IMG/VR virus record: IMGVR_UViG_3300042473_001540
Location: 186,001-250,000 of that record
Direction: 5' to 3' (one strand)
DNA: 64,000 bases
Shown here piece after piece: positions 7,468 through 59,640 of this stretch; position 1 is the first letter of the stretch; the number at the start of each line of letters is the position of its first letter. The translations under genes and the position numbers were made by a program. The notes under the pieces were generated by a model. The model did not search any database and was not told where the DNA came from. It saw only the letters and a program-made list of their open reading frames with translations.

Positions 7468-7725
7468 GTGAGGAAGCTCACTCCAGATACTGCGGTGAAC
7501 CGCCGGCAATTTCCCTACTTTGTGCGAGTCGTCAACGTGAGTAATTTTTCGCACTACACGGAAATTTGCAGCTGGACTAAACAGCGTTGGGGCTCACCAA
7601 GTAGACTCCACAAAGACGCATTGTGGGCATGTCAGATTGAAACAAGCACTGCTGGAGAGCAGGAGATGTGGATTTGGTTCCGGCATGAAGATGACATGGT
7701 GCTGTTCTCTCTCACTTGGTGCTAG
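7468..7725 (+). CDS. LTW-family small protein
   Basis: Ends WFRHEDDMVLFSLTWC. Confidence 0.8.
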   Translation: MRKLTPDTAVNRRQFPYFVRVVNVSNFSHYTEICSWTKQRWGSPSRLHKDALWACQIETSTAGEQEMWIWFRHEDDMVLFSLTWC

Positions 7726-7731
7726 GGCAAC

Positions 7732-7941
7732 ATGACAGACGTTGAAAGAGAACTAATCAACCTTGGGTTTGATATCCTCAAAGGCTGGCACAGTTGTCGA
7801 CTGAGCAGTCCGTTGCCTGATCAAAAATCCGTTTACAACTGGCTCAACACTACAGATGGCGGACGCTATTGGGTTGGTGTCATCTCCATTTATTTTGAAC
7901 GAGAAGAAGACATGATCCTGTTCCAGCTCACATGGTGTTGA
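7732..7941 (+). CDS. LTW-family small protein
   Basis: Ends YFEREEDMILFQLTWC. Confidence 0.8.
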   Translation: MTDVERELINLGFDILKGWHSCRLSSPLPDQKSVYNWLNTTDGGRYWVGVISIYFEREEDMILFQLTWC

Positions 7942-7957
7942 TTGGTAGGAAGAATAA

Positions 7958-8179
7958 ATGATCGATATTGATCAACAATACCCCAGCGACTACCACACTA
8001 ACCACACTAAAATCCAGGAATGGCATAGCTGTTCTATTCGCCAATTTGTTGGGCCTGATCGACATACCATCCTCCAGTGGCTCAAAACAACAGATGGTGG
8101 CCGCTTTTGGGAGGGCGGAACTCGAGTATGGTTTGAGAGAGAAGAAGACATGATCTTGTTCACGCTCACGTGGTCATAG
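7958..8179 (+). CDS. LTW-family small protein
   Basis: Ends WFEREEDMILFTLTWS. Confidence 0.8.
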   Translation: MIDIDQQYPSDYHTNHTKIQEWHSCSIRQFVGPDRHTILQWLKTTDGGRFWEGGTRVWFEREEDMILFTLTWS

Positions 8180-8182
8180 CCC

Positions 8183-8413
8183 GTGCACGATATCGACAAC
8201 GACTATCTCGCCAAAGGTCACAACCAGAGACGTGACTACAGCATGCTGGACCAATGGCATCTCTGCCAAGTGAATTTCTCCGCCGTTAACGGAGACAAGA
8301 TGTTTAGTTGGCTTGACGCAGCACCTGGGGAACGGTATTATTGGACACGAGCTGGTAACATTTGGTTTGAGAGGGAAGAAGACATGCTCTTGTTCAAGCT
8401 CACATGGTGTTGA
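8183..8413 (+). CDS. LTW-family small protein
   Basis: Ends WFEREEDMLLFKLTWC. Confidence 0.8.
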   Translation: MHDIDNDYLAKGHNQRRDYSMLDQWHLCQVNFSAVNGDKMFSWLDAAPGERYYWTRAGNIWFEREEDMLLFKLTWC

Positions 8414-8512
8414 GGGATGCAAGCCGGCAAAGTGTCAGAGCATGGCACGCTTTTGCTCCCTGTTGCCATTCAAAGACGTGATAGTGATCAGCTGTTTCCA
8501 TCGTGCATAAAG

Positions 8513-11492: not shown

Positions 11493-11693
11493 ATGACACT
11501 TTCTCATTGTTACAACACACGGCTAATCAGGATGAGTATTCAAGAAGCCAACAGTCGTATCTGTTGGTGTGCTGATAATTTTGGTGACCGGGATATCAAG
11601 TGGACTGTGCGATGCCACGACAGAAGTCGTTATGAATGGTGGTTTACAAATAAGGATGATTTAATTTGGTTTGGCCTTGTTTGGGAAAGTTGA
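11493..11693 (+). CDS. LTW-family small protein
   Basis: Ends WWFTNKDDLIWFGLVWES. Confidence 0.7.
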   Translation: MTLSHCYNTRLIRMSIQEANSRICWCADNFGDRDIKWTVRCHDRSRYEWWFTNKDDLIWFGLVWES

Positions 11694-12550: not shown

Positions 12551-12736
12551 ATGCAGAACCTGGGTGCAGAACTTTGGCCCCACAGAGTTGAAACTCTGGG
12601 GGGCAGTGATCAAGCTGGCATGCGTGGTTGGCTTGAGCGGAACGTGGACTGCACTGCTTGGTTCTTTGCAGCAGCCAATGTTGTGTATTTTTCGCACAAA
12701 GAAGATGCTATGCGATTCAGTTTGATTTGGACATGA
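12551..12736 (+). CDS. LTW-family small protein
   Basis: Ends YFSHKEDAMRFSLIWT. Confidence 0.8.
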   Translation: MQNLGAELWPHRVETLGGSDQAGMRGWLERNVDCTAWFFAAANVVYFSHKEDAMRFSLIWT

Positions 12737-12945
12737 AGTATTGGGCAGCAACCACGTTGGATGAGCCCAGACGTCAGGAAATGTCACGCTGGTGCAACCA
12801 AAGTTTTGGCTACACTGGGTGGATGGTTCACCCCCAGTTTGGGCAATGTGAGGAAGAATGCTATCTCAAATGGAGTTTTTGGTATCAAGCGGATGTTGTT
12901 CTTTTCACCTTGGTTTGGGATGTCGCTGCCAATGAAGATAAGTGA
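12733..12945 (+). CDS. LTW-family small protein
   Basis: WSFWYQADVVLFTLVWD. Confidence 0.75.
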   Translation: MKYWAATTLDEPRRQEMSRWCNQSFGYTGWMVHPQFGQCEEECYLKWSFWYQADVVLFTLVWDVAANEDK

Positions 12946-13133
12946 ACCAACGTGGGACAAAATTATAGCCTATTACCAAACAAAATCTCACATAGATGAT
13001 TATAATTGGGCGAGCTTCAAACAGTGGGTATGTACAACCTATAACGTTGATAAAGTCTATTTGGGTGTTGAGGTTGAACTTGTTTTTTATCTCCCAAGAA
13101 GATGAGGCTGTGTTCGCATTAAGTTGGCTATAA
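12932..13133 (+). pseudogene. LTW-family gene split by a +1 frameshift at T6 (13083-13088)
   Basis: Removing one T gives ...ELVFISQEDEAVFALSWL*, ending next to the following ATG. Confidence 0.7.
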
Positions 13134-13331
13134 ATGGGCCCTACACCGTGGAGCCACTTGCCTTATGAAGTTACCTTGCCCATCAACTCAGTTCACAATC
13201 TGTTGAAGATCAGCATCTGGTGCAACAACAACTTTGGTGACCAACCCATCAAATGGATGTATATTGGGCAAGGTCGCTGGTTGTTTCCTTCAGAGGAGCA
13301 AGCTGCTGAGTTTGCGTTGATTTGGACATGA
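13134..13331 (+). CDS. LTW-family small protein
   Basis: Ends WLFPSEEQAAEFALIWT. Confidence 0.8.
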   Translation: MGPTPWSHLPYEVTLPINSVHNLLKISIWCNNNFGDQPIKWMYIGQGRWLFPSEEQAAEFALIWT

Positions 13332-18247: not shown

Positions 18248-18526
18248 ATGACCGAAAACTATATTCTCTTGAAATGGGGCACACTCAAGGGCTATCGGGT
18301 AGCTGACAACCCTGTGGCGCAAGGTTTGATTAAACAGTACATGGAGTTGGGTGCCAGCGCCATGCACCAACAGGACACTCCCGAACAAAAACAAATCATA
18401 TGCGAACTGCTGCCTGCTCTGGCGTGCCCGCGCCGTGCCTTCCCCAACCCATACGACCCCACAGGGCTGCTGCACTGGATCGCAACCCAGGAGCCGGTCA
18501 TTCTCGGACGCGACCCCGCTGGCTAG
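18248..18526 (+). pseudogene. Chimeric ORF: phage N-terminus fused in frame to the C-terminus of a high-GC bacterial gene
   Basis: Abrupt change in composition and codon usage near 18410 (...QKQIICEL|LPALACPRR...). Confidence 0.65.
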
Positions 18527-19700
18527 CCGGCTGGCCATTTCAGGATGCCGCCATGTCACGCCGCTTTCTCGTTACCGGAGGTGCCGGCTTCGTCGGCAGC
18601 CATCTCGTCGCCGCCCTGCTGGACCAAGGCGCGGAGGTGGTGGTGTTCGACAACCTGCGCACCGGCCATCGCGAAGCCGTGCTCCCCGGCGCCACGCTGG
18701 TCACCGGCGCGCTGGAGGACCCCGATGCGATCGCGTCCGTGCTGGCGCAGGGGCCGTGGCATGCGGTGTTCCACTTCGCCGCGCTGTCGCTGGTGGGCGA
18801 TTCCATGCGCGACCCGATCGGCTATCTCTCGGCCAATGTCGGCAACGGCCTGCGCCTGTTGGAGGCCTGCGTGAAGCACGGCGTGCCCCGCTTCGTGTTC
18901 TCCTCCACCGCCGCCCTGTTCGGCACGCCAGACCGCATGCCGATCGACGAGGAAACCGCGATCGACCCCGGCTCACCCTACGGCGAAAGCAAATGGATGA
19001 TGGAGCGCGCGCTGGGCTGGGCCGAACGCATCCACGGCATGCGCTCCGCCTGCCTGCGCTACTTCAACGCCGCCGGCGCCGACCCGCAGGGCCGCCTGGG
19101 CGAGGACCACACGCCGGAAACCCATCTGATCCCGTTGGCCATCGACGCCATGCTCGGCCGTCGCGCCGAACTCGCCGTGTTTGGCACCGATTACGACACG
19201 CCGGACGGCACCTGCATCCGCGACTACATCCATGTCACCGACCTCGCCGCCGCCCACCTCGCGGCGCTGGAGCGGCTGGACCACGCCAGCGTCACCTACA
19301 ACCTCGGCACCGCCGCCGGGCATTCGGTGCTGGAGGTGATCCAGAGCGTGGAGCGCGTCAGCCGCCGCCCGGTGCCGCACCGCTTCGCCCCACGCCGCCC
19401 TGGCGACCCCGCCCGCCTTGTTGCCAGCCCGGCGCGGATCATGCGCGAAACCGGCTGGCAGCCGCGCCTCGCAGCACTGGATGACATCGTCGCCACCGCC
19501 CTGGCCTGGCGCGAAGCCCATCCGCGCGGCTACGGCGGATGAGTTACCGCATCCCGGCGCATCGGCCTGTGCGTGTTCTCAGAAGTGCATTTTTCACCTA
19601 CTTATGTCCTCATCCGCCCAGCCGCCGCAGCGAGGACCGCCACGCCATGAGCCAGCCTGCCGCGACCACGGTCGCCAAGAACCTGGGCGCATGACGCTGG
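18410..19700 (+). other. High-GC bacterial DNA segment embedded in phage sequence
   Basis: Third codon positions almost all G/C; gene fragments at both ends; no transposase, integrase or target duplication seen. Confidence 0.85.
18553..19542 (+). CDS. galE: UDP-glucose 4-epimerase
   Basis: GGAGFVG, HFAALSLVG, FSSTAA, YGESK (YxxxK), LRYFNAAGA, DGTCIRDYIHV, RRPGDP. Confidence 0.96.
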   Translation: MSRRFLVTGGAGFVGSHLVAALLDQGAEVVVFDNLRTGHREAVLPGATLVTGALEDPDAIASVLAQGPWHAVFHFAALSLVGDSMRDPIGYLSANVGNGLRLLEACVKHGVPRFVFSSTAALFGTPDRMPIDEETAIDPGSPYGESKWMMERALGWAERIHGMRSACLRYFNAAGADPQGRLGEDHTPETHLIPLAIDAMLGRRAELAVFGTDYDTPDGTCIRDYIHVTDLAAAHLAALERLDHASVTYNLGTAAGHSVLEVIQSVERVSRRPVPHRFAPRRPGDPARLVASPARIMRETGWQPRLAALDDIVATALAWREAHPRGYGG

Positions 19701-19763
19701 AAGTCCTGCATGGAGTTTCCCAACCAAGAAACTTATCTGCAATGTTTGCTCACATGGAGTTGA
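19695..19763 (+). pseudogene. 3' remnant of an LTW-family gene cut by the galE segment
   Basis: WKSCMEFPNQETYLQCLLTWS* with an in-frame stop just upstream. Confidence 0.7.
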
Positions 19764-19832: not shown

Positions 19833-19860
19833 TTGACACAGTCTGTCTGTGCTGTATATT
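19833..19860 (+). promoter_or_regulatory. Early promoter
   Basis: TTGACA-N16-TATATT. Confidence 0.7.
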
Positions 19861-19884
19861 GAAGCTACACAAGGAGAACAACAA

Positions 19885-20367
19885 ATGGAAGCCACGCCTG
19901 ATCTAGCTGTCTACGTGCTGGCCCGAACTGATCTGCCCAGTATGAACCCAGGAAAGCTGGCTGCACAAGTACATCATGCTGGAACCCAGATGATGAGCCT
20001 ATTTGCAGATCATCCACTAGTTCAACAGTATGTTGCCGACGGTGTCTCACAAGGTGCCTACTACTTCAACACCACAATTGTGCTGGGTGCCACAATGGAC
20101 CAGCTTCATGGTCTGAGATGCACTTATGGTTGGGAATACCACCTCACTGTCAAGGGGTCAGTCGTCGACCCCAGCTACCCATTTTTTGTGGAAAATCAAG
20201 AGGTAGCTGATCTTGTTGCAGCTAATGGCAAGGCAGCTGTCATCAAAACCATGGATGATGGGCGTGTGCTGATGACTCGCCAAGAGACCACTTGCATTTG
20301 GTGCCTTGTGGATCGCAACAAGCCCGAAGTTTCAGACATTCTAGGCCATCTCAAACTCTATCCCTAA
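19885..20367 (+). CDS. Peptidyl-tRNA hydrolase type 2 (PTH2)-like protein
   Basis: VYVLARTDLPSMNPGKLAAQVHHA; C-terminal LKLYP. Confidence 0.7.
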   Translation: MEATPDLAVYVLARTDLPSMNPGKLAAQVHHAGTQMMSLFADHPLVQQYVADGVSQGAYYFNTTIVLGATMDQLHGLRCTYGWEYHLTVKGSVVDPSYPFFVENQEVADLVAANGKAAVIKTMDDGRVLMTRQETTCIWCLVDRNKPEVSDILGHLKLYP

Positions 20368-21690: not shown

Positions 21691-22028
21691 AATTGGGACA
21701 ACACCTACACCAACGCCAAATGCTGTTGGATCAAGAGCTGTTGAGAACCACGTTGTTGGCAGTGCAACGTGAGCGAGAACGTGTGCATGACCAGCACTAT
21801 GATCTGGAACGCTTTAAAAGCCAGATCATCAGTTGTGTTTTGGAAAATCGGCCCATGCTCATGTTTACTCCTGGAAATAACTGGACTGACCCTCAAAATC
21901 CTGAACACCCTCCACGTTTTGTGTGCCATCGAGACCACAAGTTATGGCAAGAGTTCCTAGTTTGGTTGGAAAGTGAACACATGGAAATCCAATACCATGG
22001 ATGGAATTTCACTGTGATAGCCAAGTGA
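21687..22028 (+). CDS. Hypothetical protein
   Basis: GTGA overlap. Confidence 0.65.
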   Translation: MKLGQHLHQRQMLLDQELLRTTLLAVQRERERVHDQHYDLERFKSQIISCVLENRPMLMFTPGNNWTDPQNPEHPPRFVCHRDHKLWQEFLVWLESEHMEIQYHGWNFTVIAK

Positions 22029-22309
22029 CAGAAGACAGAGTCTTCCACAATGCGCTGCTTTTGTTTCCCAAAGATCTTTTCTGCTGCTCTGTTACACTTG
22101 GCGAGGAATACTACCGCCAACAATACGAAATCTTGGATTGGCTACGCCAACAAGGACCTGGTGACACTGGAATTGGTGATCCACCACAAGGTGAGTGCGT
22201 TTGGGCATATACACAGCTTTTTGGATACCAGTATATCGCTTTCCCCACTAGGGAACTGGTGACGCATTTTCAGCTGGTTTGGCAAAACAACACAGGACAT
22301 AGTGGTTGA
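22025..22309 (+). CDS. LTW-family protein
   Basis: YIAFPTRELVTHFQLVWQ. Confidence 0.7.
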   Translation: MTEDRVFHNALLLFPKDLFCCSVTLGEEYYRQQYEILDWLRQQGPGDTGIGDPPQGECVWAYTQLFGYQYIAFPTRELVTHFQLVWQNNTGHSG

Positions 22310-24400: not shown

Positions 24401-24428
24401 TTGACAGCCCTGAAAATCGTGCTATACT
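24401..24428 (+). promoter_or_regulatory. Early promoter
   Basis: TTGACA-N16-TATACT with TGC. Confidence 0.8.
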
Positions 24429-25674: not shown

Positions 25675-25865
25675 TGGCCTACAAAGGTGACACGGTGAAG
25701 TTTCGAGTGAGCAGTCCCAACGGCACTTGGCGCACAGTCTCCACGCTGGAAGAGGCTGAGCAAGAGATCAAAACTCTGGTGGACACCTATGGTGTGGCCT
25801 GGGCCGCAGTGGATAGGATTGAGACCACAAGGATCCTTGTTCGGCAAGTCAAGGCTGATGAGTGA
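25671..25865 (+). CDS. Hypothetical protein
   Basis: ATGA overlap. Confidence 0.6.
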   Translation: MMAYKGDTVKFRVSSPNGTWRTVSTLEEAEQEIKTLVDTYGVAWAAVDRIETTRILVRQVKADE

Positions 25866-26085
25866 CTCTTACCTTGTAACTTTGGTAGCGCCTATGTGCG
25901 ATGATTTTGATCAAGTGTGTGATTGGTGCATGCAACAATGGCCGTGTAAGGAGCGGCGCTGGCATATACACTGGGCTGGATTAACAACTAGAGGCAAGGG
26001 GTGGCAAATCACTTGCAGTTTCTGGCACCAAGATGATCTCACCATGTTCCTGCTCACATGGGCGCACCTGGTTGAATCTAGATAA
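25858..26085 (+). CDS. LTW-family protein (TWxHLV subtype)
   Basis: SFWHQDDLTMFLLTWAHLVES. Confidence 0.8.
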   Translation: MSDSYLVTLVAPMCDDFDQVCDWCMQQWPCKERRWHIHWAGLTTRGKGWQITCSFWHQDDLTMFLLTWAHLVESR

Positions 26086-26098
26086 ACAGGCGATAGTG

Positions 26099-26338
26099 AT
26101 GGCTATACTGCCCTACACAGCCACATTGGTAGCACCCAAACTCCGGGAGCTTGACCAAGTTCAGGAATGGTGCCTACAAATGTGGCCTTGTACTCATCGA
26201 GCCACATGGTATCAAGATAATATGACAATGCAAGTATTTGCAAGGTTTGAATTCAAATGCACCTGGAGTTTTCAGTTTCGAGAAGATCTCACCATGTTCC
26301 TGCTGACCTGGAGTCATTTGGTGGACAGCCATGAGTGA
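26099..26338 (+). CDS. LTW-family protein (TWxHLV subtype)
   Basis: SFQFREDLTMFLLTWSHLVDS. Confidence 0.8.
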   Translation: MAILPYTATLVAPKLRELDQVQEWCLQMWPCTHRATWYQDNMTMQVFARFEFKCTWSFQFREDLTMFLLTWSHLVDSHE

Positions 26339-26585
26339 TGCATATGTTGTGACAGTGATGGCTTACTCACTTGAAGAATTTATCCCAGTTTACAACTGGT
26401 GCTGCCGCATGTGGGGCGATACAAGCTTGTATCAGACTTGGTGTATGGGTTGGGCTAATTCAGATCTTTTGCGTGGAGTATATGTTTGCGATTGGGCTTT
26501 TCAACACAAGGATGATCTCATCATGTTTTTACTGACTTGGGGTCATTTGGTTGACTCTAGCCAAGAGGCAGAAAGTTGTGAATGA
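26331..26585 (+). CDS. LTW-family protein (TWxHLV subtype)
   Basis: AFQHKDDLIMFLLTWGHLVDS. Confidence 0.8.
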   Translation: MSDAYVVTVMAYSLEEFIPVYNWCCRMWGDTSLYQTWCMGWANSDLLRGVYVCDWAFQHKDDLIMFLLTWGHLVDSSQEAESCE

Positions 26586-26854
26586 CAAGTTCAAGATAAC
26601 ATTGAGTGCCCACACAAAGGGAGAACTCGAAGCTGTGAATCTATGGTGCCAACAGTTGTGGCCAGGTGAGTGCGGGACAGTATGGGACAGCGGATGGCCA
26701 CTACCTACAACTTTTTTTTAGAGCAGGTGGCATCACTGCGTGGCGTTGCAGTTGGTGGTTGACACGCAGGGAAGATCATGCTATGTTCCTGTTGACATGG
26801 GCACATTTGGTAGAGCCGCCCCAGAATTACACAAGGTATCCTCAAAGTGAATAA
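26578..26854 (+). pseudogene. LTW-family gene split by a +1 frameshift at T8 (26712-26719)
   Basis: Frame 0 reads MNDKFKITLSAH...PTTFF*; the +1 frame continues RAGG...REDHAMFLLTWAHLVE. Confidence 0.75.
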
Positions 26855-28779: not shown

Positions 28780-29057
28780 TGCTCTATACCGTAGCTGTGA
28801 GTTATTTTGCCACAGGCGAGGGACATACCTTGAGCCTGTGGATTGGCGTTGCTAGAGACCCCCAGGATGCCCGAGAAAAGTTTCAGCAGGCTGTGCCCAA
28901 TGGCAGTTTTTGGGTGCAGGGTGCAGAAACTTTTGAAGGTGTCAATCGTGAGCATGTGGCATGCAAGTATCTGCTCACACCATTGGCACTCACAAATCTA
29001 GAGGATCCTCATTGCATGCGTGAGTTTTCTGCTCAGCTGCATTTCAACTACAGTTGA
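28779..29057 (+). CDS. Hypothetical protein
   Basis: SYFATGEG...EFSAQLHFNYS. Confidence 0.65.
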   Translation: MLYTVAVSYFATGEGHTLSLWIGVARDPQDAREKFQQAVPNGSFWVQGAETFEGVNREHVACKYLLTPLALTNLEDPHCMREFSAQLHFNYS

Positions 29058-29108
29058 CATAGTGACAGACATGTGCTACTGTGCAAGCTGCACAATAAGG
29101 TGTGTTCA

Positions 29109-29428: not shown

Positions 29429-29704
29429 ATGAGCCAAGACTTGGACGACGATTGGGATTGGGAAGAATTTTTCCGTCAATTTCCCTGTGGTGCGGCTGTG
29501 ATTTTTGGTAACCATGTGGTGCATGCTGAGGGGTATCCTGAACCAGTCTCGGACATTGACGAAACTGAATTGCGCAAAGAGTTGGCAGAAGATCACGAGC
29601 TGGAACTGACCCTTCTCCGAGATTACTCAGTCATACGATTGGAAGGAGATAACTGGCGCCAGTTGATGCAGCAGTATGCAGGTGCAGATGGCACGCAGAA
29701 ATAA
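29429..29704 (+). CDS. Hypothetical acidic protein
   Basis: 91-aa ORF. Confidence 0.65.
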   Translation: MSQDLDDDWDWEEFFRQFPCGAAVIFGNHVVHAEGYPEPVSDIDETELRKELAEDHELELTLLRDYSVIRLEGDNWRQLMQQYAGADGTQK

Positions 29705-29927
29705 GACGCCACAACGGATCAAACCCCGCCGAGGATGGCACCGCGTGGTGTTGCCCAATGTACCCAATCCTTGGCGTGAGTTACTGACGGGCATGCCATC
29801 AACTGTGTCAAAGATTGACGACTGGCTGGCAGAAAACACCTCTGGCAAATGTGAGCAGTTTCGCTACAACACATGGGACTTCAAACGCCAAGAAGATGCC
29901 CTGTTGTTTACCTTGACGTGGGGATAG
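29688..29927 (+). CDS. LTW-family protein
   Basis: Ends WDFKRQEDALLFTLTWG. Confidence 0.8.
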   Translation: MARRNKTPQRIKPRRGWHRVVLPNVPNPWRELLTGMPSTVSKIDDWLAENTSGKCEQFRYNTWDFKRQEDALLFTLTWG

Positions 29928-29928
29928 C

Positions 29929-30264
29929 ATGGAAATAAAAATCACCAAACAAACTGTCCTTGCCCCTGTGCGTAAGTTGAGCGCAACTTGGACAATGGAA
30001 AAACCACAAACATTGAAACACACTGTGAGCGATGAGATCGAGCAACTTATCCAGGAAGAGATCAACAGTGAAATTTTAGCCGAAATATATCGAGTCCAAG
30101 GATGGTATCTTGTACCCCTCACTGCTCACAGCGTCTGGACAAAAGGCGCAGTGACGCCATGGCTCTTGGAACATTACCCAGATGGTGGTTACTATCTCTT
30201 CACTGGTGGTTGCATGTTCCGGGACAAAGAGATGGCTGTGGAGTTTGAGCTCACATGGACATAA
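29929..30264 (+). CDS. LTW-family protein fused to a gp23 major-capsid-like segment
   Basis: N-terminus IKITKQTVLAPVRKLSATWTME...EEINSEILAEI; C-terminus MFRDKEMAVEFELTWT. Confidence 0.7.
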   Translation: MEIKITKQTVLAPVRKLSATWTMEKPQTLKHTVSDEIEQLIQEEINSEILAEIYRVQGWYLVPLTAHSVWTKGAVTPWLLEHYPDGGYYLFTGGCMFRDKEMAVEFELTWT

Positions 30265-30467
30265 TACCCAAGTTCAGTTTCCTGCATCGTGTGGAATATC
30301 GGGATCTGCCCGAAGACCCGAGAGTTATGAACTATGGAGAATCTCGCACACAAATGATCATATGGTGCTGGAAAAATCTTCCTTTGAGCGATTGGTCGCA
30401 TGACCCCTTGGGTATTGATTTCAAGCATCAAGAAGGTCTCATGCAGTTTATGTTAACGTGGACATGA
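30255..30467 (+). CDS. LTW-family protein
   Basis: Ends DFKHQEGLMQFMLTWT. Confidence 0.8.
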   Translation: MDIIPKFSFLHRVEYRDLPEDPRVMNYGESRTQMIIWCWKNLPLSDWSHDPLGIDFKHQEGLMQFMLTWT

Positions 30468-30685
30468 TTGTTACCAAGTGCTTGCCCGGCGGTGGATGGT
30501 ATGCCGAAGTCATGCTGGACGATAGTGAATGGCCACCAATTGATGAAAATGACCAATGGTTAGACAGACCCATTCGACGTTGGGTAAGAGAACACACTGA
30601 GGGAGCACATTTTTTCAGTTTTAGGGGAACAATACTGTTCAGTAACGAAAGTGATCTCACAGCGTTTGTGGTCTCTTGGTCATAA
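30458..30685 (+). CDS. LTW-family protein
   Basis: Ends LFSNESDLTAFVVSWS. Confidence 0.75.
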   Translation: MDMIVTKCLPGGGWYAEVMLDDSEWPPIDENDQWLDRPIRRWVREHTEGAHFFSFRGTILFSNESDLTAFVVSWS

Positions 30686-30693
30686 CACGTAGA

Positions 30694-30933
30694 GTGGCCC
30701 GCTTTTTGGAAAAGGAGAAGGATCCTCTCTACCCTTATCCGGTTGTGTTTGACAACATGGAAGTCTCTGAGGCTGAAATACTTCGAGCCTGGCTAAGACA
30801 GCATGGTGGCCGAGAAAACGAGGATTGGGCTTGGACTCATGGATGGTGGGGAGATACCGTTCACTGTTTTAGGTTTCGAGATCCTTGCACAGCAGAGTTT
30901 TTCCGCTTGACTTGGCACCCAACAAGCGTATAG
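30694..30933 (+). CDS. LTW-family protein
   Basis: FRFRDPCTAEFFRLTWH. Confidence 0.75.
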   Translation: MARFLEKEKDPLYPYPVVFDNMEVSEAEILRAWLRQHGGRENEDWAWTHGWWGDTVHCFRFRDPCTAEFFRLTWHPTSV

Positions 30934-30940
30934 TTGCAGT

Positions 30941-31108: not shown

Positions 31109-31523
31109 TCCCAAAACTGTTTGGCACGAGGATGGAACCAGCCCAGTTCCTGGCTCGCGTGTATTTGTTTTTGGCAGCAATCTCGCTGGCATTCACGGTG
31201 CCGGAGCGGCCCGGGAGGCTGCCGCTAAATTTGGTGCCCTGTATGGTTGCGGCCATGGCTGGCAACCTCTCAATCAAAGCTATGCCATTCCCACCAAGGA
31301 CCGTCGAATCCACACCCTAGCTTTGGATGAGATCAAACTCTATATTGATGAATTTGTGCGACTCACACAAAGCCCGTTTGTTATGAATAGTGGTTATTGG
31401 GTCACCCGAGTGGGCTGTGGCCTAGCTGGTTACCAAGACCACGACATTGCACCATTGTTCCGTGGCGCAGTAAATTGCAGTTTTCCTTTGCCTTGGCGCC
31501 AGTATTTGGAGCTTGAGACTTGA
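31095..31523 (+). CDS. A1S_2505-like / macro-domain-like phage protein
   Basis: VFVFGSNLAGIHGAGAA...SYAIPTK...VTRVGCGLAG. Confidence 0.75.
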   Translation: MNTNNPKTVWHEDGTSPVPGSRVFVFGSNLAGIHGAGAAREAAAKFGALYGCGHGWQPLNQSYAIPTKDRRIHTLALDEIKLYIDEFVRLTQSPFVMNSGYWVTRVGCGLAGYQDHDIAPLFRGAVNCSFPLPWRQYLELET

Positions 31524-31828
31524 TTGACATAGCTTTTCCTAATAGCCGCATTGGGCACTACATGCGGGTCACAAAGAGGTCTGGAAAGTGGGTGATGCAA
31601 CAAAGCTACATTGCACTGATTCACAAAATCGCCACCACCGAAGACTGCTATTACCTTGACTTCTACAAAAGCCGAGATAATGCCACAATGCTGGAGTGGT
31701 GCCAAAACGCATGGGGTCCGCCAGAGGTTGGTGAAACATGGTGGCAAAAGCTCACTGGGCAAGCTCAACTCACACTTGTGATACGTGGCGAAGAGCGTGT
31801 CACGCAATGGCAACTAACCTGGGAGTAA
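31520..31828 (+). CDS. LTW-family protein with longer N-terminus
   Basis: Ends VIRGEERVTQWQLTWE. Confidence 0.7.
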   Translation: MIDIAFPNSRIGHYMRVTKRSGKWVMQQSYIALIHKIATTEDCYYLDFYKSRDNATMLEWCQNAWGPPEVGETWWQKLTGQAQLTLVIRGEERVTQWQLTWE

Positions 31829-31832
31829 GCCA

Positions 31833-32120
31833 ATGAGCAGTGAATATCAGCATTTGAAAACTCTTGCATCGGAAATTTTCCGGCTGATGGGCGAGGAGAG
31901 TTTCACAGAGATAGACAGCATCTTGAGCAATATGCAGCCTACACTTCAAACAGAAGTAGAGATGGTGGCACTGCTACGCTACAGTTTTACAGCTCGGCAT
32001 CATCTCACCTGTTACCATATCTATCTTGACGCAGTAGCACAGGAATTGCTGCGTCGTGGCAAAGATGTGGAGAGGATTTTGCAGGGACTGCCCTTCTACA
32101 GCATCGATAGGTATCCATGA
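31833..32120 (+). CDS. Hypothetical protein
   Basis: Fits the operon. Confidence 0.65.
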   Translation: MSSEYQHLKTLASEIFRLMGEESFTEIDSILSNMQPTLQTEVEMVALLRYSFTARHHLTCYHIYLDAVAQELLRRGKDVERILQGLPFYSIDRYP

Positions 32121-32383
32121 GTCAGCAGGCTGCGCAGACTAGGGAGGCACATTTGTTGAATCACCAACCAGTTGACTGGGCAGATGATGTGATGGGGTTT
32201 CCCTACGCAGTCGCATGCAAGGTCACAGTGGTGGATTTGTGGCTTCGAACCAACTGGTGCAAGCAAAACATTGGCTGCTGGTTGGTAGATTGGACTCACA
32301 CATATGATAACCACCGGCAGGTGTATTGGTACTGTTTCTCTAGTCAGGAGCAATTGACACAGTTTCAACTCACATGGTGTTGA
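32117..32383 (+). CDS. LTW-family protein
   Basis: Ends YCFSSQEQLTQFQLTWC. Confidence 0.8.
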   Translation: MSQQAAQTREAHLLNHQPVDWADDVMGFPYAVACKVTVVDLWLRTNWCKQNIGCWLVDWTHTYDNHRQVYWYCFSSQEQLTQFQLTWC

Positions 32384-32408: not shown

Positions 32409-32651
32409 GTGATTCGTATGGTTTTGCAGAAAATTTATCAACAAAATCAATGGTATGATAGCTTAAGTGGACATTACGTGCACCCCTACAAAGTTCCTGT
32501 TGTTTCTCACGCCCCAAGCGGTTGCATTCGCCCGGGACATCTATTGGGTTATACTTTTCTCAGGCACTCCTATGTTCCTCTATCTCATGTGGGGCTTATG
32601 GCACTGTGGCGCTTTCCGTATGTGATCAAGAACAAGCGTCAGCAACGTTGA
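32409..32651 (+). CDS. Hypothetical protein
   Basis: AAGGA RBS. Confidence 0.55.
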   Translation: MIRMVLQKIYQQNQWYDSLSGHYVHPYKVPVVSHAPSGCIRPGHLLGYTFLRHSYVPLSHVGLMALWRFPYVIKNKRQQR

Positions 32652-32697
32652 CACACAACAACAATCCGTTACTATAATATTACAAAAGGAGACTACT

Positions 32698-33069
32698 ATG
32701 CGAATTCAGGTGCCATTCAAGCCAGGCTACCGTTTCTGGAGCCCGCGTGTGCTCCGTCGAAGCGAGCTGGTCACCATCACGCATGAGTGCAAGGAGTATT
32801 CTCGGCGAGAAGAAACTCTTGAGATCAGTGCCCGGCACAAGGAGATCACCAGTGTTGAAATCACACTGAACCAAACTGGTGAGTCCAAGTTTCGCTATTG
32901 GGCTGTGACTGTGGGAAAGACAATGGCTATACACACTCTTGTTGATCCCTATTCGGGATTCAGCAATGAGCAAGATGCAACAGAGTTCGCTCGTCTCTGG
33001 CGAGATACACAGAGCACTGAATATTTTGGTAGCCCAATTGGCGAGTGCCATGATTACGACCATGAGTGA
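32698..33069 (+). CDS. Hypothetical protein
   Basis: Promoter at 32648, AAGGAG RBS. Confidence 0.7.
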   Translation: MRIQVPFKPGYRFWSPRVLRRSELVTITHECKEYSRREETLEISARHKEITSVEITLNQTGESKFRYWAVTVGKTMAIHTLVDPYSGFSNEQDATEFARLWRDTQSTEYFGSPIGECHDYDHE

Positions 33070-33262: not shown

Positions 33263-33537
33263 TGGGTTGGTTTGATAACTGCACAAAGGTTTGTCTATCG
33301 GGCCAAATACCCTGTAACTGTGATTTCATGCCGGGTCAGCAGGTGTTTCTCACAAGCAAGGACAGAGATCGTCATGCTGAAGACTATGCAAGTAGGAAAA
33401 CCAATTGGAGTGCGCCTTTTGAACCTTGGGTTGTGGAAACATGGCGCAGGTGTAGTGAAGCAACAGGCGCAGACAAAGTTGCCCAGAAAGTGCGTGACCG
33501 TTTGACCAACAGGCCTGTCTTTGCCAAACGACCTTAA
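33262..33537 (+). CDS. Hypothetical protein
   Basis: Coupled ORF; CLSGQIPCNC. Confidence 0.55.
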   Translation: MGWFDNCTKVCLSGQIPCNCDFMPGQQVFLTSKDRDRHAEDYASRKTNWSAPFEPWVVETWRRCSEATGADKVAQKVRDRLTNRPVFAKRP

Positions 33538-33817
33538 TACCTGCTGTATTTTTGAATTTCCTATGGGAGGTGTTACCAGCTGGGTAGTGCGGTTGCCCAA
33601 CAGCACCAACGGCCACGAACCCCAAGTAGTCAATTGGCTAATTGAGAGATTTGGCATCGACGATCACGAATATTGGACAAAAATCTTCAACCAGAAGAGA
33701 GAGACGCCCAACAGCCTTTGGAAACGAGGCAGCATCTGCACCTATGTGTATCAGGAATACTGGTTCACCAACAGAGATGATGCATTTGAGACCTATTTGG
33801 TGTTCTCAAAAATTTAA
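33521..33817 (+). CDS. Divergent LTW-family protein
   Basis: YWFTNRDDAFETYLVFS. Confidence 0.6.
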   Translation: MPNDLNTCCIFEFPMGGVTSWVVRLPNSTNGHEPQVVNWLIERFGIDDHEYWTKIFNQKRETPNSLWKRGSICTYVYQEYWFTNRDDAFETYLVFSKI

Positions 33818-58000: not shown

Positions 58001-58423
58001 AGGCACATTGGCTAGATTGAAACCATTGGAGTCATAGATATTTTGATCAGTGATTACTTGAGTTAACTTAACCAAACCCTGTGCAGCAATACAGCGTCGT
58101 GGGTTGTAGGAAATCAGCCTGGCAAGGCGAAAAATACTGTCACGTCGGGTAGCAGTATCGATGAAATTTTCCCGAATATTCAGATCCAAACGGAATGCCA
58201 AACTGGATGCCAAATAAGCCAAAAGTTCAATTATTGCGACAAATTCGCTGCTTTCAATCCAGTCGTTGAAATCTTCTGGATAATTCAAGCGGATGTAATC
58301 AATCAAAGCTTGGCGGATAGTATCATAGTCATAGGCATTAAAATTTACCTGACTCATGGCTTGATACAGCACACGCCAATCTTGTCCAAGGAATAAATTA
58401 TTTTGTCGGAGGCTTTGACTCAT
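55043..58423 (-). CDS. Baseplate wedge subunit (T4 gp6-like)
   Basis: YDYDTIRQALIDYIRLNYPEDFNDWIESSEF...ENFIDTATRRDSI...LSRESNAFIRERAP..YSQNRMVNGEDY. Confidence 0.88.
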   Translation of the reverse strand: MSQSLRQNNLFLGQDWRVLYQAMSQVNFNAYDYDTIRQALIDYIRLNYPEDFNDWIESSEFVAIIELLAYLASSLAFRLDLNIRENFIDTATRRDSIFRLARLISYNPRRCIAAQGLVKLTQVITDQNIYDSNGFNLANVPVIWNDANNPDWFEQFILVLNASFSKVNPFGQPVKSGAVNGLTVERYDLDNTVTRTLAFPFTGVVNGQQMNFEFVNTDFVNSVSGSITVGSAGYYREKTPNYIQPWSVLYRNDGNGNASPDTGFFGLFKQGTLSFTDFVLSEPLSNRVLDLTALNVNESDVWVETVDDQGNTLVEWTKVPALFGTNIAYNSLNRSTRDIFQVITRDISGTDSISIKFSDGNFGNIPVGRIRVYFRTSNNLTYTILPQDISSVPLSLSYYRDNDGTSQNLLQMQFDLQSSVANSLSRESNAFIRERAPAVFYSQNRMVNGEDYNVYPLISSQALKIKSVNRVYSGQSRYIDINDPTSTYQNSKVFSDDGILFEEEHETYIEVPNSLNVNNTQILDTYIQPLIQGSVDSRKINTDMRDFYLAKYPKRGGGNIQWTNQNPSNTVFPNAHFYTQTVDFVLALPDTTYGIRKGSYLFFANGTSSYLVDEGNSVSSAGNAIISSFVPNGTMLSSVIPSFKDVLLSAEKDAVKNALDEKLSFGISYIQLTGMWQIISTSNLAVDADFSLAQQGNTANQNLDASWLIQLKYVPGFGWYITSRGLKYVFESVNDVRFYTINTSPVISSNTGLANQDFVKILRVNTNLATNLSFSQDWFWPIASQQLYPDGYIEPRRVQVRFQDSNFDGIVDNPDEFKVIVDPDREQQIDLDTGLITGSSFPYVFWKTTVINGFDYLTPTTVDKIFTDLISMSTKYPPNPLSWNDGEVAYVRDQKLFFKYQFSNNSLIDVTPSYKAAVGRNDLNYCWQHFIDKGKRVDPAIMNIIDTYVLTSSYDTAMRNWIARGKTTDPMPQPPAPEDLRITFAEFDTYKMMTDQLIWHPVKYKLLFGQSADPELRVSFKVVKNSGVSITDSEIKARIIRDIDNYFSIANWDFGQSFFFTELAAYIHQQNPAILNSLVIVPQNQNSSFGDLFEIKCQPDEIFISSARVTDILIVPSLNQTELRLK

Positions 58424-58491
58424 TCGATATGTGCCCTGTTTTATCTACTTGCGTATTTAAGCGAGTTTTAACCACACATATAACTTAAGAT

Positions 58492-58887
58492 TTAGATAAT
58501 AGTGGTTTCAACATTTCTGCGATCAAAATCAATTTGGAAAACTTCCACAATATCCAACGGTTGGTAGTAGAGATCCATCTGGAGTTGCAGGCCATTGTCA
58601 TATTCAGTAAGTTTGATATCTCGTATTTGAACTCGACCATCAGCTGCCACTATTTGATAGCAGTCGTCAATAATCATCTGCAGGTTGTCAGCCACCATGG
58701 GTTCAAATAACATGTCCCAAATTATTGATCCAAAGTCTGGGCGCATGACTCTTTCGCGTTTCCTTGTATAAAACGCATTAACCAAATCTCTCTTGATAAG
58801 ATCAAGATCAGTGTATTGTGTTTGTTTGATACTGGTGTCCACTGAACTATAACCAATGAACAATCGGGTGCGGGGTGCTACTGCCAT
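58492..58887 (-). CDS. Baseplate protein gp25-like
   Basis: TDLDLIKRDLVNAFYTRKRERVMRPDFGSIIWDMLFEP; TAAATA at 58899-58894. Confidence 0.88.
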   Translation of the reverse strand: MAVAPRTRLFIGYSSVDTSIKQTQYTDLDLIKRDLVNAFYTRKRERVMRPDFGSIIWDMLFEPMVADNLQMIIDDCYQIVAADGRVQIRDIKLTEYDNGLQLQMDLYYQPLDIVEVFQIDFDRRNVETTII

Positions 58888-58940
58888 AATACTTATTTAG
58901 AGAAGATTTGACACTCTAAAATCTTGCCACAAAATAAGTG

Positions 58941-59444
58941 ATGAATAAAAAACATTTGAGTTTTGATGATATTACTGTTCTTACCTACAGTCTTTGCGAT
59001 AATATAGAGGCGTCAGGTTGGCAGCCCTCGATTGTTGTTGGCATTACTAGGGGTGGCCTCCTTACAGCCAAAATGTTGAGTCATTATTGGAAAGTGCCTA
59101 TGTGCACAATTGATGTGAGCTTGCGGGACTATACCTTATGGAGCGAAGATTTCAATACCAATTTGGTAATTGAGGCATTCAATGGTCACAATCTTCTTGT
59201 GGTTGATGATATAAACGACAGTGGTGCAACAGGGATCAAGATCAAAAACACTTGGACCACTGTAGTGAACAGTTTGCCAGAACATCAATCATTATGGCCC
59301 AAAAACAATATCAAATTTGGCGTGCTGTTGGAAAATGAAGTCAGCTCTCACCAAAGTGACTTTTGGGGCTCAAAAATCAACAAGGAACAAGATCCCATTT
59401 GGTATGTTTTTCCTTGGGAGATCCAACGGGGCAAGGGTGATTGA
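58941..59444 (+). CDS. Type I phosphoribosyltransferase
   Basis: GITRGG; PRPP loop LVVDDINDSGAT; WYVFPWE. Confidence 0.88.
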   Translation: MNKKHLSFDDITVLTYSLCDNIEASGWQPSIVVGITRGGLLTAKMLSHYWKVPMCTIDVSLRDYTLWSEDFNTNLVIEAFNGHNLLVVDDINDSGATGIKIKNTWTTVVNSLPEHQSLWPKNNIKFGVLLENEVSSHQSDFWGSKINKEQDPIWYVFPWEIQRGKGD

Positions 59445-59640
59445 AAAAACACACAATCTATTGTTTCCTTGGAGCGTGAGAATGAACTTTGATGTGGTGG
59501 ATTGGACACCTATGGACCATTGGTGTGTAGAGCATTTTGGCAATGAAGGTGTGTTGTGGAGCATTGGTTGGGAGAATGGCACGTGGGATTTTCAAAAATT
59601 TGAGGATGCAATGATGATGTGGCTGACATGGGTGAGATAA
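59437..59640 (+). CDS. LTW-family protein
   Basis: Ends WDFQKFEDAMMMWLTWVR. Confidence 0.75.
   Translation: MIEKTHNLLFPWSVRMNFDVVDWTPMDHWCVEHFGNEGVLWSIGWENGTWDFQKFEDAMMMWLTWVR

What the first reader, a model, noticed from the sequence alone, without database searches (positions are those of the whole stretch)
7468..59640. About 24 small 'LTW' paralogues with variable N-termini and a constant C-terminal motif
Seen: about 24 genes of roughly 60-110 aa (excluding the truncated remnant at 19695) end in [WYF]F-x-x-[EKR]-[ED]-D-x-x-x-F-x-L-[TVI]-W. They start at 7468, 7732, 7958, 8183, 11493, 12551, 12733, 12932, 13134, 19695 (remnant), 22025, 25858, 26099, 26331, 26578, 29688, 29929, 30255, 30458, 30694, 31520, 32117, 33521 and 59437. 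Most also have an internal W[CL] motif, and many sit in tandem arrays. Inference: a conserved C-terminal docking or fold element carrying diversified target-binding surfaces, i.e. a library of adaptors or inhibitors, for example against host defences. The VWA-like protein at the window start and the AAA ATPase at 34798 are speculative common partners. I know of no assigned function for this family.
Basis: partly seen in the sequence, partly recalled or inferred. Interest (0 to 1): 0.85.

Follow-up and report, generated by a model that had tools for sequence, protein, structure and literature searches.

The report
Trp-rich small-protein family in jumbo phage
A 64-kb stretch of an uncultured giant T4-like phage carries more than 20 very different copies of one tiny, tryptophan-rich protein domain that is in no protein-family database, occurs only in phages, and sits in early-expressed operons, which makes it a good candidate for a host-takeover or counter-defence toolkit, though no function has been shown.

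Summary
The window holds 20 intact members, 2 copies frameshifted at T-runs, 1 truncated remnant, 1 divergent member (33521) and 1 possible extra (32698). All are on the + strand.

AlphaFold2 gives strand-helix-strand-strand-helix at pLDDT 92. "LTW" ends the last helix, and "W[CL]" lies in helix 1.

The family matches nothing in Pfam, PHROGs, NCBIfam or PDB sequences, and no solved fold matches significantly. It is nevertheless large: 563 clusters at 50% identity in metagenomes. It is phage-restricted: 21 confirmed IMG/VR contigs against 0 confirmed in 596 Gb of cellular genomes. Diverged members exist in the cultured Sinorhizobium phage Phosso.

- **Divergence:** paralogues share a median 23% identity.
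- **Selection:** orthologues in related phages are under purifying selection (dN/dS mostly 0.1-0.4).
- **Turnover:** copies are gained, lost and broken between relatives.
- **Expression context:** arrays lie behind sigma-70/extended -10 promoters (24 on +, 1 on -), partly co-operonic with an RNA-repair ligase.

No support was found for a VWA or AAA hub. My best reading is a set of early-expressed, paralogue-specific binding modules for takeover or counter-defence. That function is inferred, not shown.

The parts
7468..7725 (+). LTW member, 85 aa; first of a 4-gene tandem array
   Evidence: External HMM (A2) E 6e-16; seed HMM E 3e-20
7732..7941 (+). LTW member, 69 aa
   Evidence: A2 HMM E 4e-7; 53% identical to 7958 over 55 aa
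7958..8179 (+). LTW member, 73 aa
   Evidence: A2 HMM E 3e-8
8183..8413 (+). LTW member, 76 aa; last of the array; terminator-like hairpin follows at 8432-8448
   Evidence: A2 HMM E 5e-7; terminator scan
11493..11693 (+). LTW member, 66 aa, solitary
   Evidence: A2 HMM E 4e-15
12551..12736 (+). LTW member, 61 aa; first of the second array
   Evidence: A2 HMM E 4e-6
12733..12945 (+). LTW member, 70 aa; start overlaps the previous stop
   Evidence: A2 HMM E 4e-9
12932..13133 (+). Frameshifted LTW copy; the frame changes at a T6 run near 13083-13088
   Evidence: Three-frame translation. C-terminal half E 0.28 with the seed HMM. Identical sequence in three independent metagenome assemblies
13134..13331 (+). 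LTW member, 65 aa, the minimal domain; the protein modelled at pLDDT 91.8
19695..19763 (+). Truncated remnant: last strand and helix only, ending LLTWS-stop
   Evidence: Translation. Lies just after the 63%-GC epimerase gene 18400-19542
22025..22309 (+). LTW member, 94 aa (102 aa if the ATG at 22001 is used)
   Evidence: A2 HMM E 3e-8; identical protein P0007 seen on 42 contigs
25858..26085 (+). LTW member, 75 aa; first of a lineage-specific triplication downstream of the Rnl1-like ligase
   Evidence: A2 HMM E 4e-16. Groups with 26099 and 26331 against single copies in relatives L008 and L010
26099..26338 (+). LTW member, 79 aa
   Evidence: A2 HMM E 6e-18
26331..26585 (+). LTW member, 84 aa
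   Evidence: A2 HMM E 2e-14
26578..26854 (+). Frameshifted fourth copy of that array; the frame changes at a T8 run at 26712-26719
   Evidence: N-terminal half E 1e-3 and C-terminal half E 3e-6 in two different frames; translation
29688..29927 (+). LTW member, 79 aa, the only basic one (pI 10.3); first of a 5-gene array
   Evidence: A2 HMM E 3e-8; pI
29929..30264 (+). LTW member, 111 aa; the first 55-62 aa are a piece of a T4-type major capsid protein
   Evidence: Pfam Gp23 E 1.3e-6 at 28.5 bits, above the 24.4-bit cut-off. tblastn hits capsid genes in 459 phage records. LTW half: seed HMM E 2e-15
30255..30467 (+). LTW member, 70 aa
   Evidence: A2 HMM E 3e-7
30458..30685 (+). LTW member, 75 aa; two copies of this type in relative L006
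   Evidence: A2 HMM E 7e-4, seed HMM E 4e-14; tree
30694..30933 (+). LTW member, 79 aa; last of the array; terminator-like hairpin at 30840-30863
   Evidence: A2 HMM E 2e-11
31520..31828 (+). LTW member, 102 aa, with a long N-terminal extension
   Evidence: A2 HMM E 4e-6
32117..32383 (+). LTW member, 88 aa; first AlphaFold2 model
   Evidence: A2 HMM E 3e-14; model
32698..33069 (+). Possible distant relative, 123 aa; only the last strand and helix match
   Evidence: Passed only E<=0.01 against the small window gene set. E 4.6 with the seed HMM and not recovered in the six-frame A2 search. Aligned
33521..33817 (+). Divergent member, 98 aa; keeps strand 1, helix 1 and the Trp, but ends LVFSKI instead of LTW
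   Evidence: E 0.003; 69% identical orthologue in L006
59437..59640 (+). LTW member, 67 aa, solitary, on the far side of the structural genes
   Evidence: A2 HMM E 2e-9
6325..6352 (+). Sigma-70/extended -10 promoter-like site ahead of the unit 6931-8413 (ORF 6931 plus 4 LTW genes)
   Evidence: 11 of 12 consensus matches plus TG; enrichment test
24401..24428 (+). Promoter-like site ahead of the Rnl1-like ligase (24457-25674) and the 25858-26854 array
29054..29082 (+). Promoter-like site ahead of the 29688-30933 array
30907..30934 (+). Promoter-like site ahead of 30941-32651, which includes members 31520 and 32117
32648..32675 (+). Promoter-like site ahead of 32698 and 33521

Best explanation
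**Shown**
- The 'LTW' genes encode one autonomous domain of about 55-65 residues, ordered strand1-helix1-strand2-strand3-helix2.
- The conserved aromatic residues (Y, V, W, W, W, F, F, L, W) are spaced as in the buried core of a two-layer alpha/beta sandwich. 'F..EED...F.LTW' is strand 3 plus the last helix. The protein normally ends one residue after the Trp.
- The family is restricted to phages, mostly large T4-like myoviruses known from metagenomes.
- This phage is a jumbo relative of Sinorhizobium phage Phosso and Agrobacterium phage Atu_ph07.
- Each such genome keeps many old, deeply diverged paralogues in tandem arrays.
- The arrays evolve by local duplication, loss, frameshift and truncation. 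Each orthologue line stays under purifying selection.
- Length and sequence variation concentrate in the N-terminal extension, the helix1-strand2 loop and the strand2-strand3 hairpin.
- The genes sit on the strand that carries 24 sigma-70/extended -10 promoter-like sites. Some share a transcription unit with an RNA-repair ligase.

**Inferred**
- The proteins are made early by the host polymerase.
- They act as small, stable binding modules. The Trp core is the constant scaffold. The loops and extensions give each paralogue its own partner among host proteins, host defence proteins or proteins of competing elements.
- The set therefore serves host takeover or counter-defence.
- Two-domain fusions in other phages suggest the domain works in pairs.
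For: **Family and significance:** (563 clusters at E<=1e-3).

**Fold:** (pLDDT 91.8, pTM 0.74, same secondary-structure order in two members). Conservation is spread over the whole domain.

**No known family or fold:**

**Phage restriction:** the IUPAC scan gave 22 IMG/VR contigs, 21 of them HMM-confirmed, against 2 unconfirmed hits in 596 Gb of bacterial and archaeal genomes.

**Multi-copy in unrelated phages:** L005 has up to 14 (12 domain hits in the six-frame search), L020 has 7 domain hits in 6 ORFs, and L014/L029 have 4.

**Old paralogues:** median 23% and maximum 47% identity.

**Birth and death:**

**Purifying selection:** dN/dS 0.10-0.81, mostly below 0.35.

**Paralogue-specific N-extensions** are conserved between orthologues at 54% identity.

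**Where length varies:**

**Charge and composition:** acidic, median pI 5.4, with 6.8% Trp.

**Promoters:** 24 on + and 1 on -, against 1.7 +/- 1.5 expected.

**Neighbourhood:** RNA or tRNA-repair genes around the arrays. An Acb1-like anti-CBASS gene lies about 3 kb from an array in L029.

**Two-domain proteins:**
Against: - No binding partner, expression data or phenotype exists. The function rests on context and analogy.
- dN/dS gives no sign of positive selection. It does not differ from neighbouring small ORFs, and dS is saturated in most pairs.
- Promoters are consensus matches only, and the host is unknown.
- Burial of the conserved residues is inferred from spacing. Model coordinates could not be inspected.
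- A cluster of conserved polar residues (N46, G48, E72, E73, D74) could mark a common ligand or partner site. That would favour a shared rather than a diversified function.
Confidence: 0.5

Rival explanations
1. The C-terminal motif is a docking peptide that plugs all paralogues into one common hub, such as the VWA-like protein or the AAA ATPase at 34798. The N-termini carry different cargo-binding surfaces.
For: - The C-terminal third is the most conserved part.
- The C-terminus position is fixed in 68 of 98 representatives.
- Conserved acidic residues lie at the start of the last helix.
- One member carries a foreign N-terminal payload, a capsid-protein piece.
- An AAA gene lies near arrays in the window, in Phosso and in L005.
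Against: - The motif is part of a confidently predicted globular domain, with invariant Trp residues also in the N-terminal half.
- The AAA of L005 is unrelated to the window's AAA beyond the P-loop.
- Arrays in L020, L022, L024 and L029 have no shared AAA or VWA neighbour.
- The AAA adjacency in Phosso is explained by synteny with the window's phage.
Confidence: 0.1
2. Ligand sponge or sensor. The domain oligomerises like ACT or RAM modules and sequesters a small molecule, for example an immune signalling nucleotide. The conserved aromatic and acidic residues would form the pocket.
For: - The weak structural neighbours are ACT, RAM and other ferredoxin-like ligand-binding modules.
- The proteins are rich in aromatic residues.
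- Two-domain fusions suggest oligomers.
- Small phage sponges are an established class (my own knowledge).
- An Acb1-like gene lies near one array.
Against: - No structural match is significant: best E 0.3, and 1.5 with the better model.
- More than 20 paralogues at 23% identity is hard to reconcile with one ligand.
- The conserved aromatic residues have core-like spacing.
Confidence: 0.12
3. Nucleic-acid-binding regulators: small DNA- or RNA-binding proteins that retune host or phage gene expression, or act with the neighbouring RNA-repair enzymes.
For: - Co-transcription with the Rnl1-like ligase, and a neighbourhood rich in RNA-repair genes.
- The alpha/beta sandwich topology is shared with RRM, KH and S6-type RNA binders among the weak hits.
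- The helix-1 motif WC..NFG...W recurs in repeats at the C-terminus of a helicase, P0027.
Against: - Members are mostly acidic: median pI 5.4, and only 29688 is basic.
- There are no conserved basic residues.
- The helicase repeats match only helix 1 and are themselves uncharacterised.
Confidence: 0.08
4. Virion-associated or assembly proteins, for example packaged internal proteins or capsid-associated factors.
For: - Member 29929 is fused to a conserved piece of the major capsid protein. That fusion is kept at 98% identity between strains.
- T4 internal proteins are a precedent for polymorphic small packaged proteins (my own knowledge).
Against: - The arrays lie in sigma-70-promoter units among metabolic and RNA-repair genes. 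They are not in the - strand structural module at 40-58 kb.
- There is no shared N-terminal targeting sequence; N-termini differ between paralogues.
Confidence: 0.07
5. Largely dispensable, selfish or decaying DNA: duplicated small ORFs with no function for the phage.
For: Two frameshifted copies and one truncated remnant. Copy number varies between relatives.
Against: - Orthologues are under purifying selection.
- Paralogues are ancient yet keep a confident fold.
- The family persists in unrelated phages with GC from 34% to 51%.
Confidence: 0.03

Closest known systems
Lineage-specific expansions of small domains in jumbo phages, e.g. the ~35-copy zinc-ribbon family of Bacillus phage G (Iyer et al. 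2021, PMC7824862)
   Same: Dozens of copies of one small domain in a single large phage genome, with function guessed from context.
   Different: The domain is unrelated: no zinc ligands, and a Trp-core alpha/beta fold. This family is shared by many unrelated large phages rather than confined to one lineage.
Multigene families and 'genomic accordions' of poxviruses and giant viruses (reviewed in PMC13359090)
   Same: Tandem arrays that expand and contract between close relatives. Members are deeply diverged. The role is presumed to be in host antagonism.
   Different: - This is a bacterial virus.
- The units are tiny, about 65 aa.
- The paralogues here are old (median 23% identity), not recent amplifications.
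- No selective sweep or positive selection was detected.
Early 'hyperplastic-region' ORFs and the polymorphic internal-protein locus of T4-like phages (my own knowledge)
   Same: Small, fast-changing accessory genes behind host-type early promoters in T4-like genomes. Several characterised examples block host defences.
   Different: No sequence relation: 112 members had no PHROG hit. T4 internal proteins share an N-terminal capsid-targeting sequence, whereas here the constant part is the whole domain and N-termini differ.
Tfb5/p8 and the Tfb2 C-terminal domain of TFIIH (PDB 3dom, 3dgp), and other minimal strand-helix-strand-strand-helix modules
   Same: TM-score about 0.5 with rmsd 2.6-2.7 A over 55 columns. 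The shared strand-helix-strand-strand-helix order, the similar size, and the fact that those domains work as a pseudo-symmetric pair are from my own knowledge. Pairing is also hinted here by the two-domain fusions.
   Different: The Foldseek E-value is 3.9-4.1, with 5% identity. This is a resemblance of topology, not evidence of homology.
Known small phage anti-defence proteins (Acb1, Ocr, Acr and sponge families)
   Same: Small, acidic, early, phage-only and mobile between genomes. An Acb1-like gene (Pfam PF23474, E 3e-19) lies about 3 kb from an LTW array in L029.
   Different: No member matches any Pfam or PHROG model of these families. No anti-defence activity has been tested.

Membership tests
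LTW family as defined here (profile A2) | Significant match to a profile built from proteins outside the window | tested here: met
   All 20 intact members score E 6e-18 to 7e-4. The halves of the frameshifted 26578 copy score 1e-3 and 3e-6. 33521 scores 3e-3.
LTW family as defined here (profile A2) | Strand-helix-strand-strand-helix domain with invariant W (helix 1), W (strand 2), F (strand 3), and F and W (helix 2), ending about 1 residue after the last W | tested here: met
   Two AlphaFold2 models give the same order of elements. The C-tail median is 1 residue in the window and in 102 representatives. Exceptions: 33521 lacks the final W; 25858, 26099, 26331, 12733 and 22025 have 7-14-residue tails.
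Any curated protein family (Pfam-A, PHROGs v4, NCBIfam 20) | Match at or near the family's threshold | tested here: not met
   There was no consistent hit for 10 + 102 + 20 members. The scattered single hits at E>0.002 each involve a different family.
Any protein with a solved structure | Sequence-profile or fold match | tested here: not met
Profile against PDB sequences: best E 0.053.
ACT / RAM / ferredoxin-like ligand-binding domains | Strand-helix-strand-strand-helix-strand with four strands; ligand site at a dimer interface | tested here: inconclusive
   These are the top weak neighbours (E 0.3-0.9, TM 0.3-0.46). The LTW domain ends after helix 2, with no fourth strand. Oligomeric state could not be tested.
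T4-type major capsid protein gp23 (only for residues 1-62 of member 29929) | Match to Pfam PF07068 above the gathering score; full HK97-type fold | tested here: inconclusive
   Homology to a capsid-protein segment is met: 28.5 bits against a 24.4 cut-off, and 459 capsid-gene tblastn hits. Only 64 of 376 profile positions are covered (about aa 201-255 of a 465-aa capsid protein). It is therefore a captured fragment, not a capsid protein.
T4 internal proteins (packaged, polymorphic) | Shared N-terminal capsid-targeting sequence with a prohead-protease site | tested here: not met
   N-termini are not alignable between paralogues, and extension lengths range from 3 to 63 aa. There was no PHROG hit. 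Packaging itself cannot be tested with these tools.
MoxR-AAA / VWA chaperone system as common partner (Iyer et al. 2021) | Conserved co-occurrence of LTW arrays with the AAA or VWA genes across unrelated phages | tested here: not met
   The window AAA hits classic AAA (PF00004), and no MoxR-type (AAA_3) family appears among its 11 Pfam hits. The L005 AAA is unrelated to it. No AAA or VWA lies beside arrays in L022, L024 or L029, and the AAA in L020 is a clamp loader.

The most novel reading that the evidence does not exclude
The LTW domain is a phage-encoded minimal binder scaffold that works in pairs. Co-expressed paralogues would homo- and heterodimerise by sheet extension, as the natural two-domain fusions suggest. 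A genome with 25 or more paralogues would then field a combinatorial repertoire of recognition surfaces against host defence and takeover targets. Some members would carry decoy payloads, such as the capsid-protein piece fused in 29929, which could bait capsid-sensing immunity. This would be a new, widespread class of anti-defence or takeover proteins in environmental jumbo phages.
Probability: 0.15. Interest if true: 0.85.

Novelty: new variant of a known kind. Interest (0 to 1): 0.6.

Why it matters
Large phages are full of small genes with no assigned function. Here more than 20 of them in one 64-kb stretch collapse into a single, well-defined domain that is not in any database searched.

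The domain comes with a usable profile and a confident structural model. It has a clear phyletic pattern: phages only, hundreds of sequence clusters, many copies per genome.

If the members are paralogue-specific inhibitors or adaptors, they are a rich source of new counter-defence or host-takeover activities. They would also offer a naturally diversified mini-scaffold.

Diverged members exist in a cultured phage, Sinorhizobium phage Phosso, so the hypothesis can be tested with ordinary laboratory strains.

Tried and rejected
**Database matches**
- Pfam, PHROGs and NCBIfam scans of 132 members in total found no family.
- A profile search against PDB sequences found nothing.
- Foldseek against PDB (twice) and BFVD found nothing significant. 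The BFVD top hits are uncharacterised proteins of uncultured phages and of Atu_ph07, at E 0.02-0.4.

**Cultured phages**
- tblastn of five members against 50,697 GenBank phage records gave one useful hit. Three queries returned nothing, one returned only chance hits (tape-measure genes at E 3-5, a Bacillus phage ORF at E 0.5), and one gave a weak hit in Phosso. An HMM scan of that Phosso region then confirmed members there.
- 81 kb of Atu_ph07 (60-141 kb) scanned with the HMMs gave no hit. The rest of that genome was not scanned.

I replaced it with an IUPAC pattern scan.

**Partner hypothesis**
- AAA as common partner: rejected.

**Selection**
I used whole-gene dN/dS and region-wise identity instead. 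Neither shows excess change or positive selection in the N-terminal part.

**Other leads**
- Helicase-associated repeats in P0027 and P0049 share only the helix-1 motif and are themselves unannotated, so they give no functional lead.
- Shine-Dalgarno sequences are weak or absent before many members, so they were not used as evidence.
- Literature searches found no description of this family.

Full report
**What the window is**

The window is part of a large T4-like myovirus.
- It encodes a 1126-aa baseplate wedge protein. That protein is 40% identical to those of Sinorhizobium phage Phosso (469 kb) and 39% identical to Agrobacterium phage Atu_ph07 (490 kb), and about 36% identical to the GAP32 / Serratia BF group.
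- It also encodes a 4017-aa ORF, an S74-type tail fibre, two RNA ligases, a kinase-phosphatase, ThyX, NUDIX, Thg1-like and Pth2-like proteins, and homing endonucleases.
- No GenBank phage is close at the DNA level.
- Stretches identical to the window occur in several independent metagenome assemblies, and an identical member protein sits on contigs up to 329 kb.
- More distant syntenic relatives were fetched as L006 and L008-L011.

Yes.
- A profile from 20 listed genes finds those 20 ORFs at E 1e-20 to 7e-14 and nothing else below 1e-4.
- That test is circular, so I built a second profile (A2) from 101 metagenomic proteins plus one window member. It recovers all 20 at E 6e-18 to 7e-4.
- The strict motif occurs 8 times against 0.0 in shuffles.
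- 12932 and 26578 are true copies split by single-base frameshifts that coincide with a T6 and a T8 run. The same sequence is present in independent assemblies.
- 19695 is a 22-codon tail, 'LLTWS-stop', immediately after a 63%-GC epimerase gene.
- 33521 is a divergent member without the final LTW, but it has clear orthologues.
- 32698 is a possible extra member with only weak support.
- All copies are on the + strand. At least two more lie elsewhere on the same phage contig.

**What the protein is**

- The alignment of window members and of 102 diverse relatives shows conservation over the whole length, not only at the C-terminus. The consensus reads: PY.V (strand 1), I..WC..NFG (end of helix 1), W (strand 2), W.F (strand 3), EEDA..F.LTW (helix 2).
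- AlphaFold2 predicts the same strand-helix-strand-strand-helix order for member 32117 (pLDDT about 90 in the core) and for the minimal 65-aa member 13134 (pLDDT 91.8, pTM 0.74).
- Conserved hydrophobic positions alternate in the strands (i, i+2, i+4) and recur at i, i+3/4, i+7 in the helices. That is the pattern of a buried core in a two-layer sandwich. This is my inference from spacing; I could not inspect coordinates.
- The C-terminal third is the most conserved part: 2.3-2.4 bits per column against 1.3-1.5.
- Length variation sits in the N-terminal extension (3-63 aa), the helix1-strand2 loop (1-21) and the strand2-strand3 hairpin (5-18). The tail after the last Trp is usually one residue.
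- Members are acidic (median pI 5.4) and contain 6.8% Trp.

**Is it a known family?**

No. There is no match in:
- Pfam, PHROGs or NCBIfam;
- PDB sequences;
- PDB folds.

The nearest shapes are generic small alpha/beta sandwiches (ACT/RAM, RRM, secretin N-domains, Tfb5/Tfb2C) at TM 0.5 or below and E 0.3 or above. BFVD returns only uncharacterised phage proteins at E 0.02-0.4.

**How widespread is it?**

- A full profile search of 1.84 billion representative proteins finds 563 clusters at E<=1e-3. Among the 150 best that are listed, nearly all are 58-100 aa, and a few are two-domain proteins of 120-165 aa.
- A degenerate DNA pattern for 'EEDA..F.LTW' hits 22 IMG/VR viral contigs. Of these, 21 are confirmed by the profile and most have several copies side by side. 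GC ranges from 34% to 51%, and contigs reach 518 kb.
- The same pattern gives only 2 hits in 596 Gb of bacterial and archaeal genomes, and the profile confirms neither.
- An unrelated 155-kb phage contig (L005) carries up to 14 copies within about 5 kb.
- Five members searched by tblastn against 50,697 GenBank phages gave only one useful hit, in Phosso.
- Scanning 80 kb of Phosso around that hit found gp265 (E 3e-9) and gp248 (E 4e-7), plus five weaker candidates. Several of these lack the terminal Trp. Five of the seven, including gp265 and gp248, lie in the stretch syntenic with the window: AAA, RNA ligase, Pth, phosphatase, HNH, giant structural protein, wedge. The other two candidates lie further upstream.
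- 81 kb of Atu_ph07 gave nothing.

**How it evolves**

- Paralogues in the window share a median 23% identity, with a maximum of 47%.
- Well-supported clades are orthologue groups shared with relatives, plus local duplications. For example, 25858, 26099, 26331 and the broken 26578 correspond to a single gene in L008 and L010. L006 has two copies of the 30458 type.
- Orthologue dN/dS is 0.10-0.81, mostly below 0.35. That is no different from neighbouring small ORFs, and dS is saturated in most pairs.
- The region is mosaic: 29929 is 98% identical between the window and L008, while its neighbours are 40-45% identical.
- Between orthologues, identity is 54% in the N-extension, 54% in strand1-helix1, 47% in the hairpin and 61% in strand3-helix2. 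So the N-terminal parts differ between paralogues but are conserved within each orthologue line. That is what paralogue-specific function would predict.

**Expression context**

- The pattern TTGAC[AT]-N15-17-TAnnnT occurs 24 times on the + strand and once on the - strand, against 1.7 +/- 1.5 expected. Twelve sites have TTGACA plus an extended -10 TG.
- All but two weak sites lie in the + strand accessory regions (1-40 kb and 59-64 kb), not in the - strand structural module.
- Predicted transcription units:
  - P6325, then ORF 6931 and four LTW genes, then a hairpin at 8432.
  - P24401, then the Rnl1-like ligase and four LTW copies.
  - P29054, then five LTW genes, then a hairpin at 30840.
  - P30907 and P32648, ahead of the remaining members.
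- These are consensus matches, not measured transcripts.

**Interpretation**

- The shown facts fit a stable mini-scaffold whose loops and extensions have diversified. It appears to be expressed early, alongside RNA-repair and nucleotide-metabolism genes.
- By analogy with early accessory genes of T4-like phages and with multigene families of large DNA viruses, I consider paralogue-specific protein binding for host takeover or counter-defence the most likely role (confidence about 0.5).
- An Acb1-like anti-CBASS gene about 3 kb from an array in an unrelated phage is weak supporting context.
- The hub model with VWA or AAA partners found no support.
- Sponge, nucleic-acid-binding and virion roles are not excluded. 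They fit less well with the acidity, the number and depth of the paralogues, and the genomic position.

**Verdict**

This is a real, previously unannotated, phage-only domain family, described here with a profile, a fold model and an evolutionary pattern. Its function is unproven. A cultured relative, Phosso, makes it testable.

Noticed in passing
window 29929-30120 (N-terminal part of member 29929-30264): The first 55-62 residues are homologous to an internal segment of T4-type major capsid proteins. The match is to about aa 201-255 of the 465-aa capsid protein of Synechococcus phage S-WAM2. This piece is fused to a normal LTW domain. The fusion is conserved in all relatives and is 98% identical between strains whose neighbouring genes are only 40-45% identical. 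It could be a capsid-piece decoy or an assembly modulator.
   Followed up: partly
window ~13083-13088 (T6) and 26712-26719 (T8): Both broken LTW copies change frame at a homopolymeric T run. The sequence is identical in independent metagenome assemblies. They could be pseudogenes made by slippage, or genes that need transcriptional or ribosomal slippage to be expressed.
   Followed up: partly
window 18400-19763: An NAD-dependent epimerase/dehydratase gene sits in a 63%-GC island within a 41-55%-GC genome, directly followed by a truncated LTW remnant. This looks like an insertion that destroyed an LTW gene. A 56%-identical epimerase sits at a different position in relative L010.
   Followed up: partly
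window, + strand, 1-40 kb and 59-64 kb: There are 24 sigma-70-type promoter-like sites on the + strand against 1 on the - strand, where about 1.7 are expected. Many share TTGACA-N14-TGCTATAnT. This looks like a dense early-promoter system read by the host polymerase.
   Followed up: yes
window 2419-3311 and 3906-4558: Two other small paralogue sets. The first is three overlapping-end ORFs sharing 'FP(D/E)L(Y)TW..LN..EEW'. The second is two predicted membrane ORFs that are 30% identical and both end in GSRSAKT.RAL.
   Followed up: no
window 1860-2438, 5429-6316, 16520-17731, 19849-20367, 24457-25674, 36181-37413, 61022-61894: An unusually full RNA/tRNA-repair set: Rv2179c-like exoribonuclease, RlaP-type nucleotidyltransferase, Rnl2-like and Rnl1-like ligases, Pth2-like hydrolase, kinase-phosphatase, and Thg1-like guanylyltransferase.
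   Followed up: no
proteins P0027 (1176 aa) and P0049 (505 aa), from the representative search: A ResIII/DEAD helicase and a repeat protein carry 5-7 repeats containing 'WCNQNFGDKEIW'. This is almost the same as the helix-1 segment of members 13134 and 11493. The repeats match only that part of the profile and are not in Pfam.
   Followed up: partly
L037 19830-20144 (Phosso gp265): The best Phosso member has a strongly acidic N-terminal extension rich in Asp and Glu ahead of the LTW-type domain, reminiscent of DNA-mimic proteins.
   Followed up: no
L006 2483-3765: In this relative the Rnl1-like ligase is called as two ORFs of 212 and 198 aa, instead of the single 405-aa gene in the window.
   Followed up: no
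window 1-264: This is the C-terminal end of an ORF with a VWA-like 'GGGTD...IIFTD' pattern. A NUMOD3 homing endonuclease follows on the opposite strand (288-1319).
   Followed up: partly
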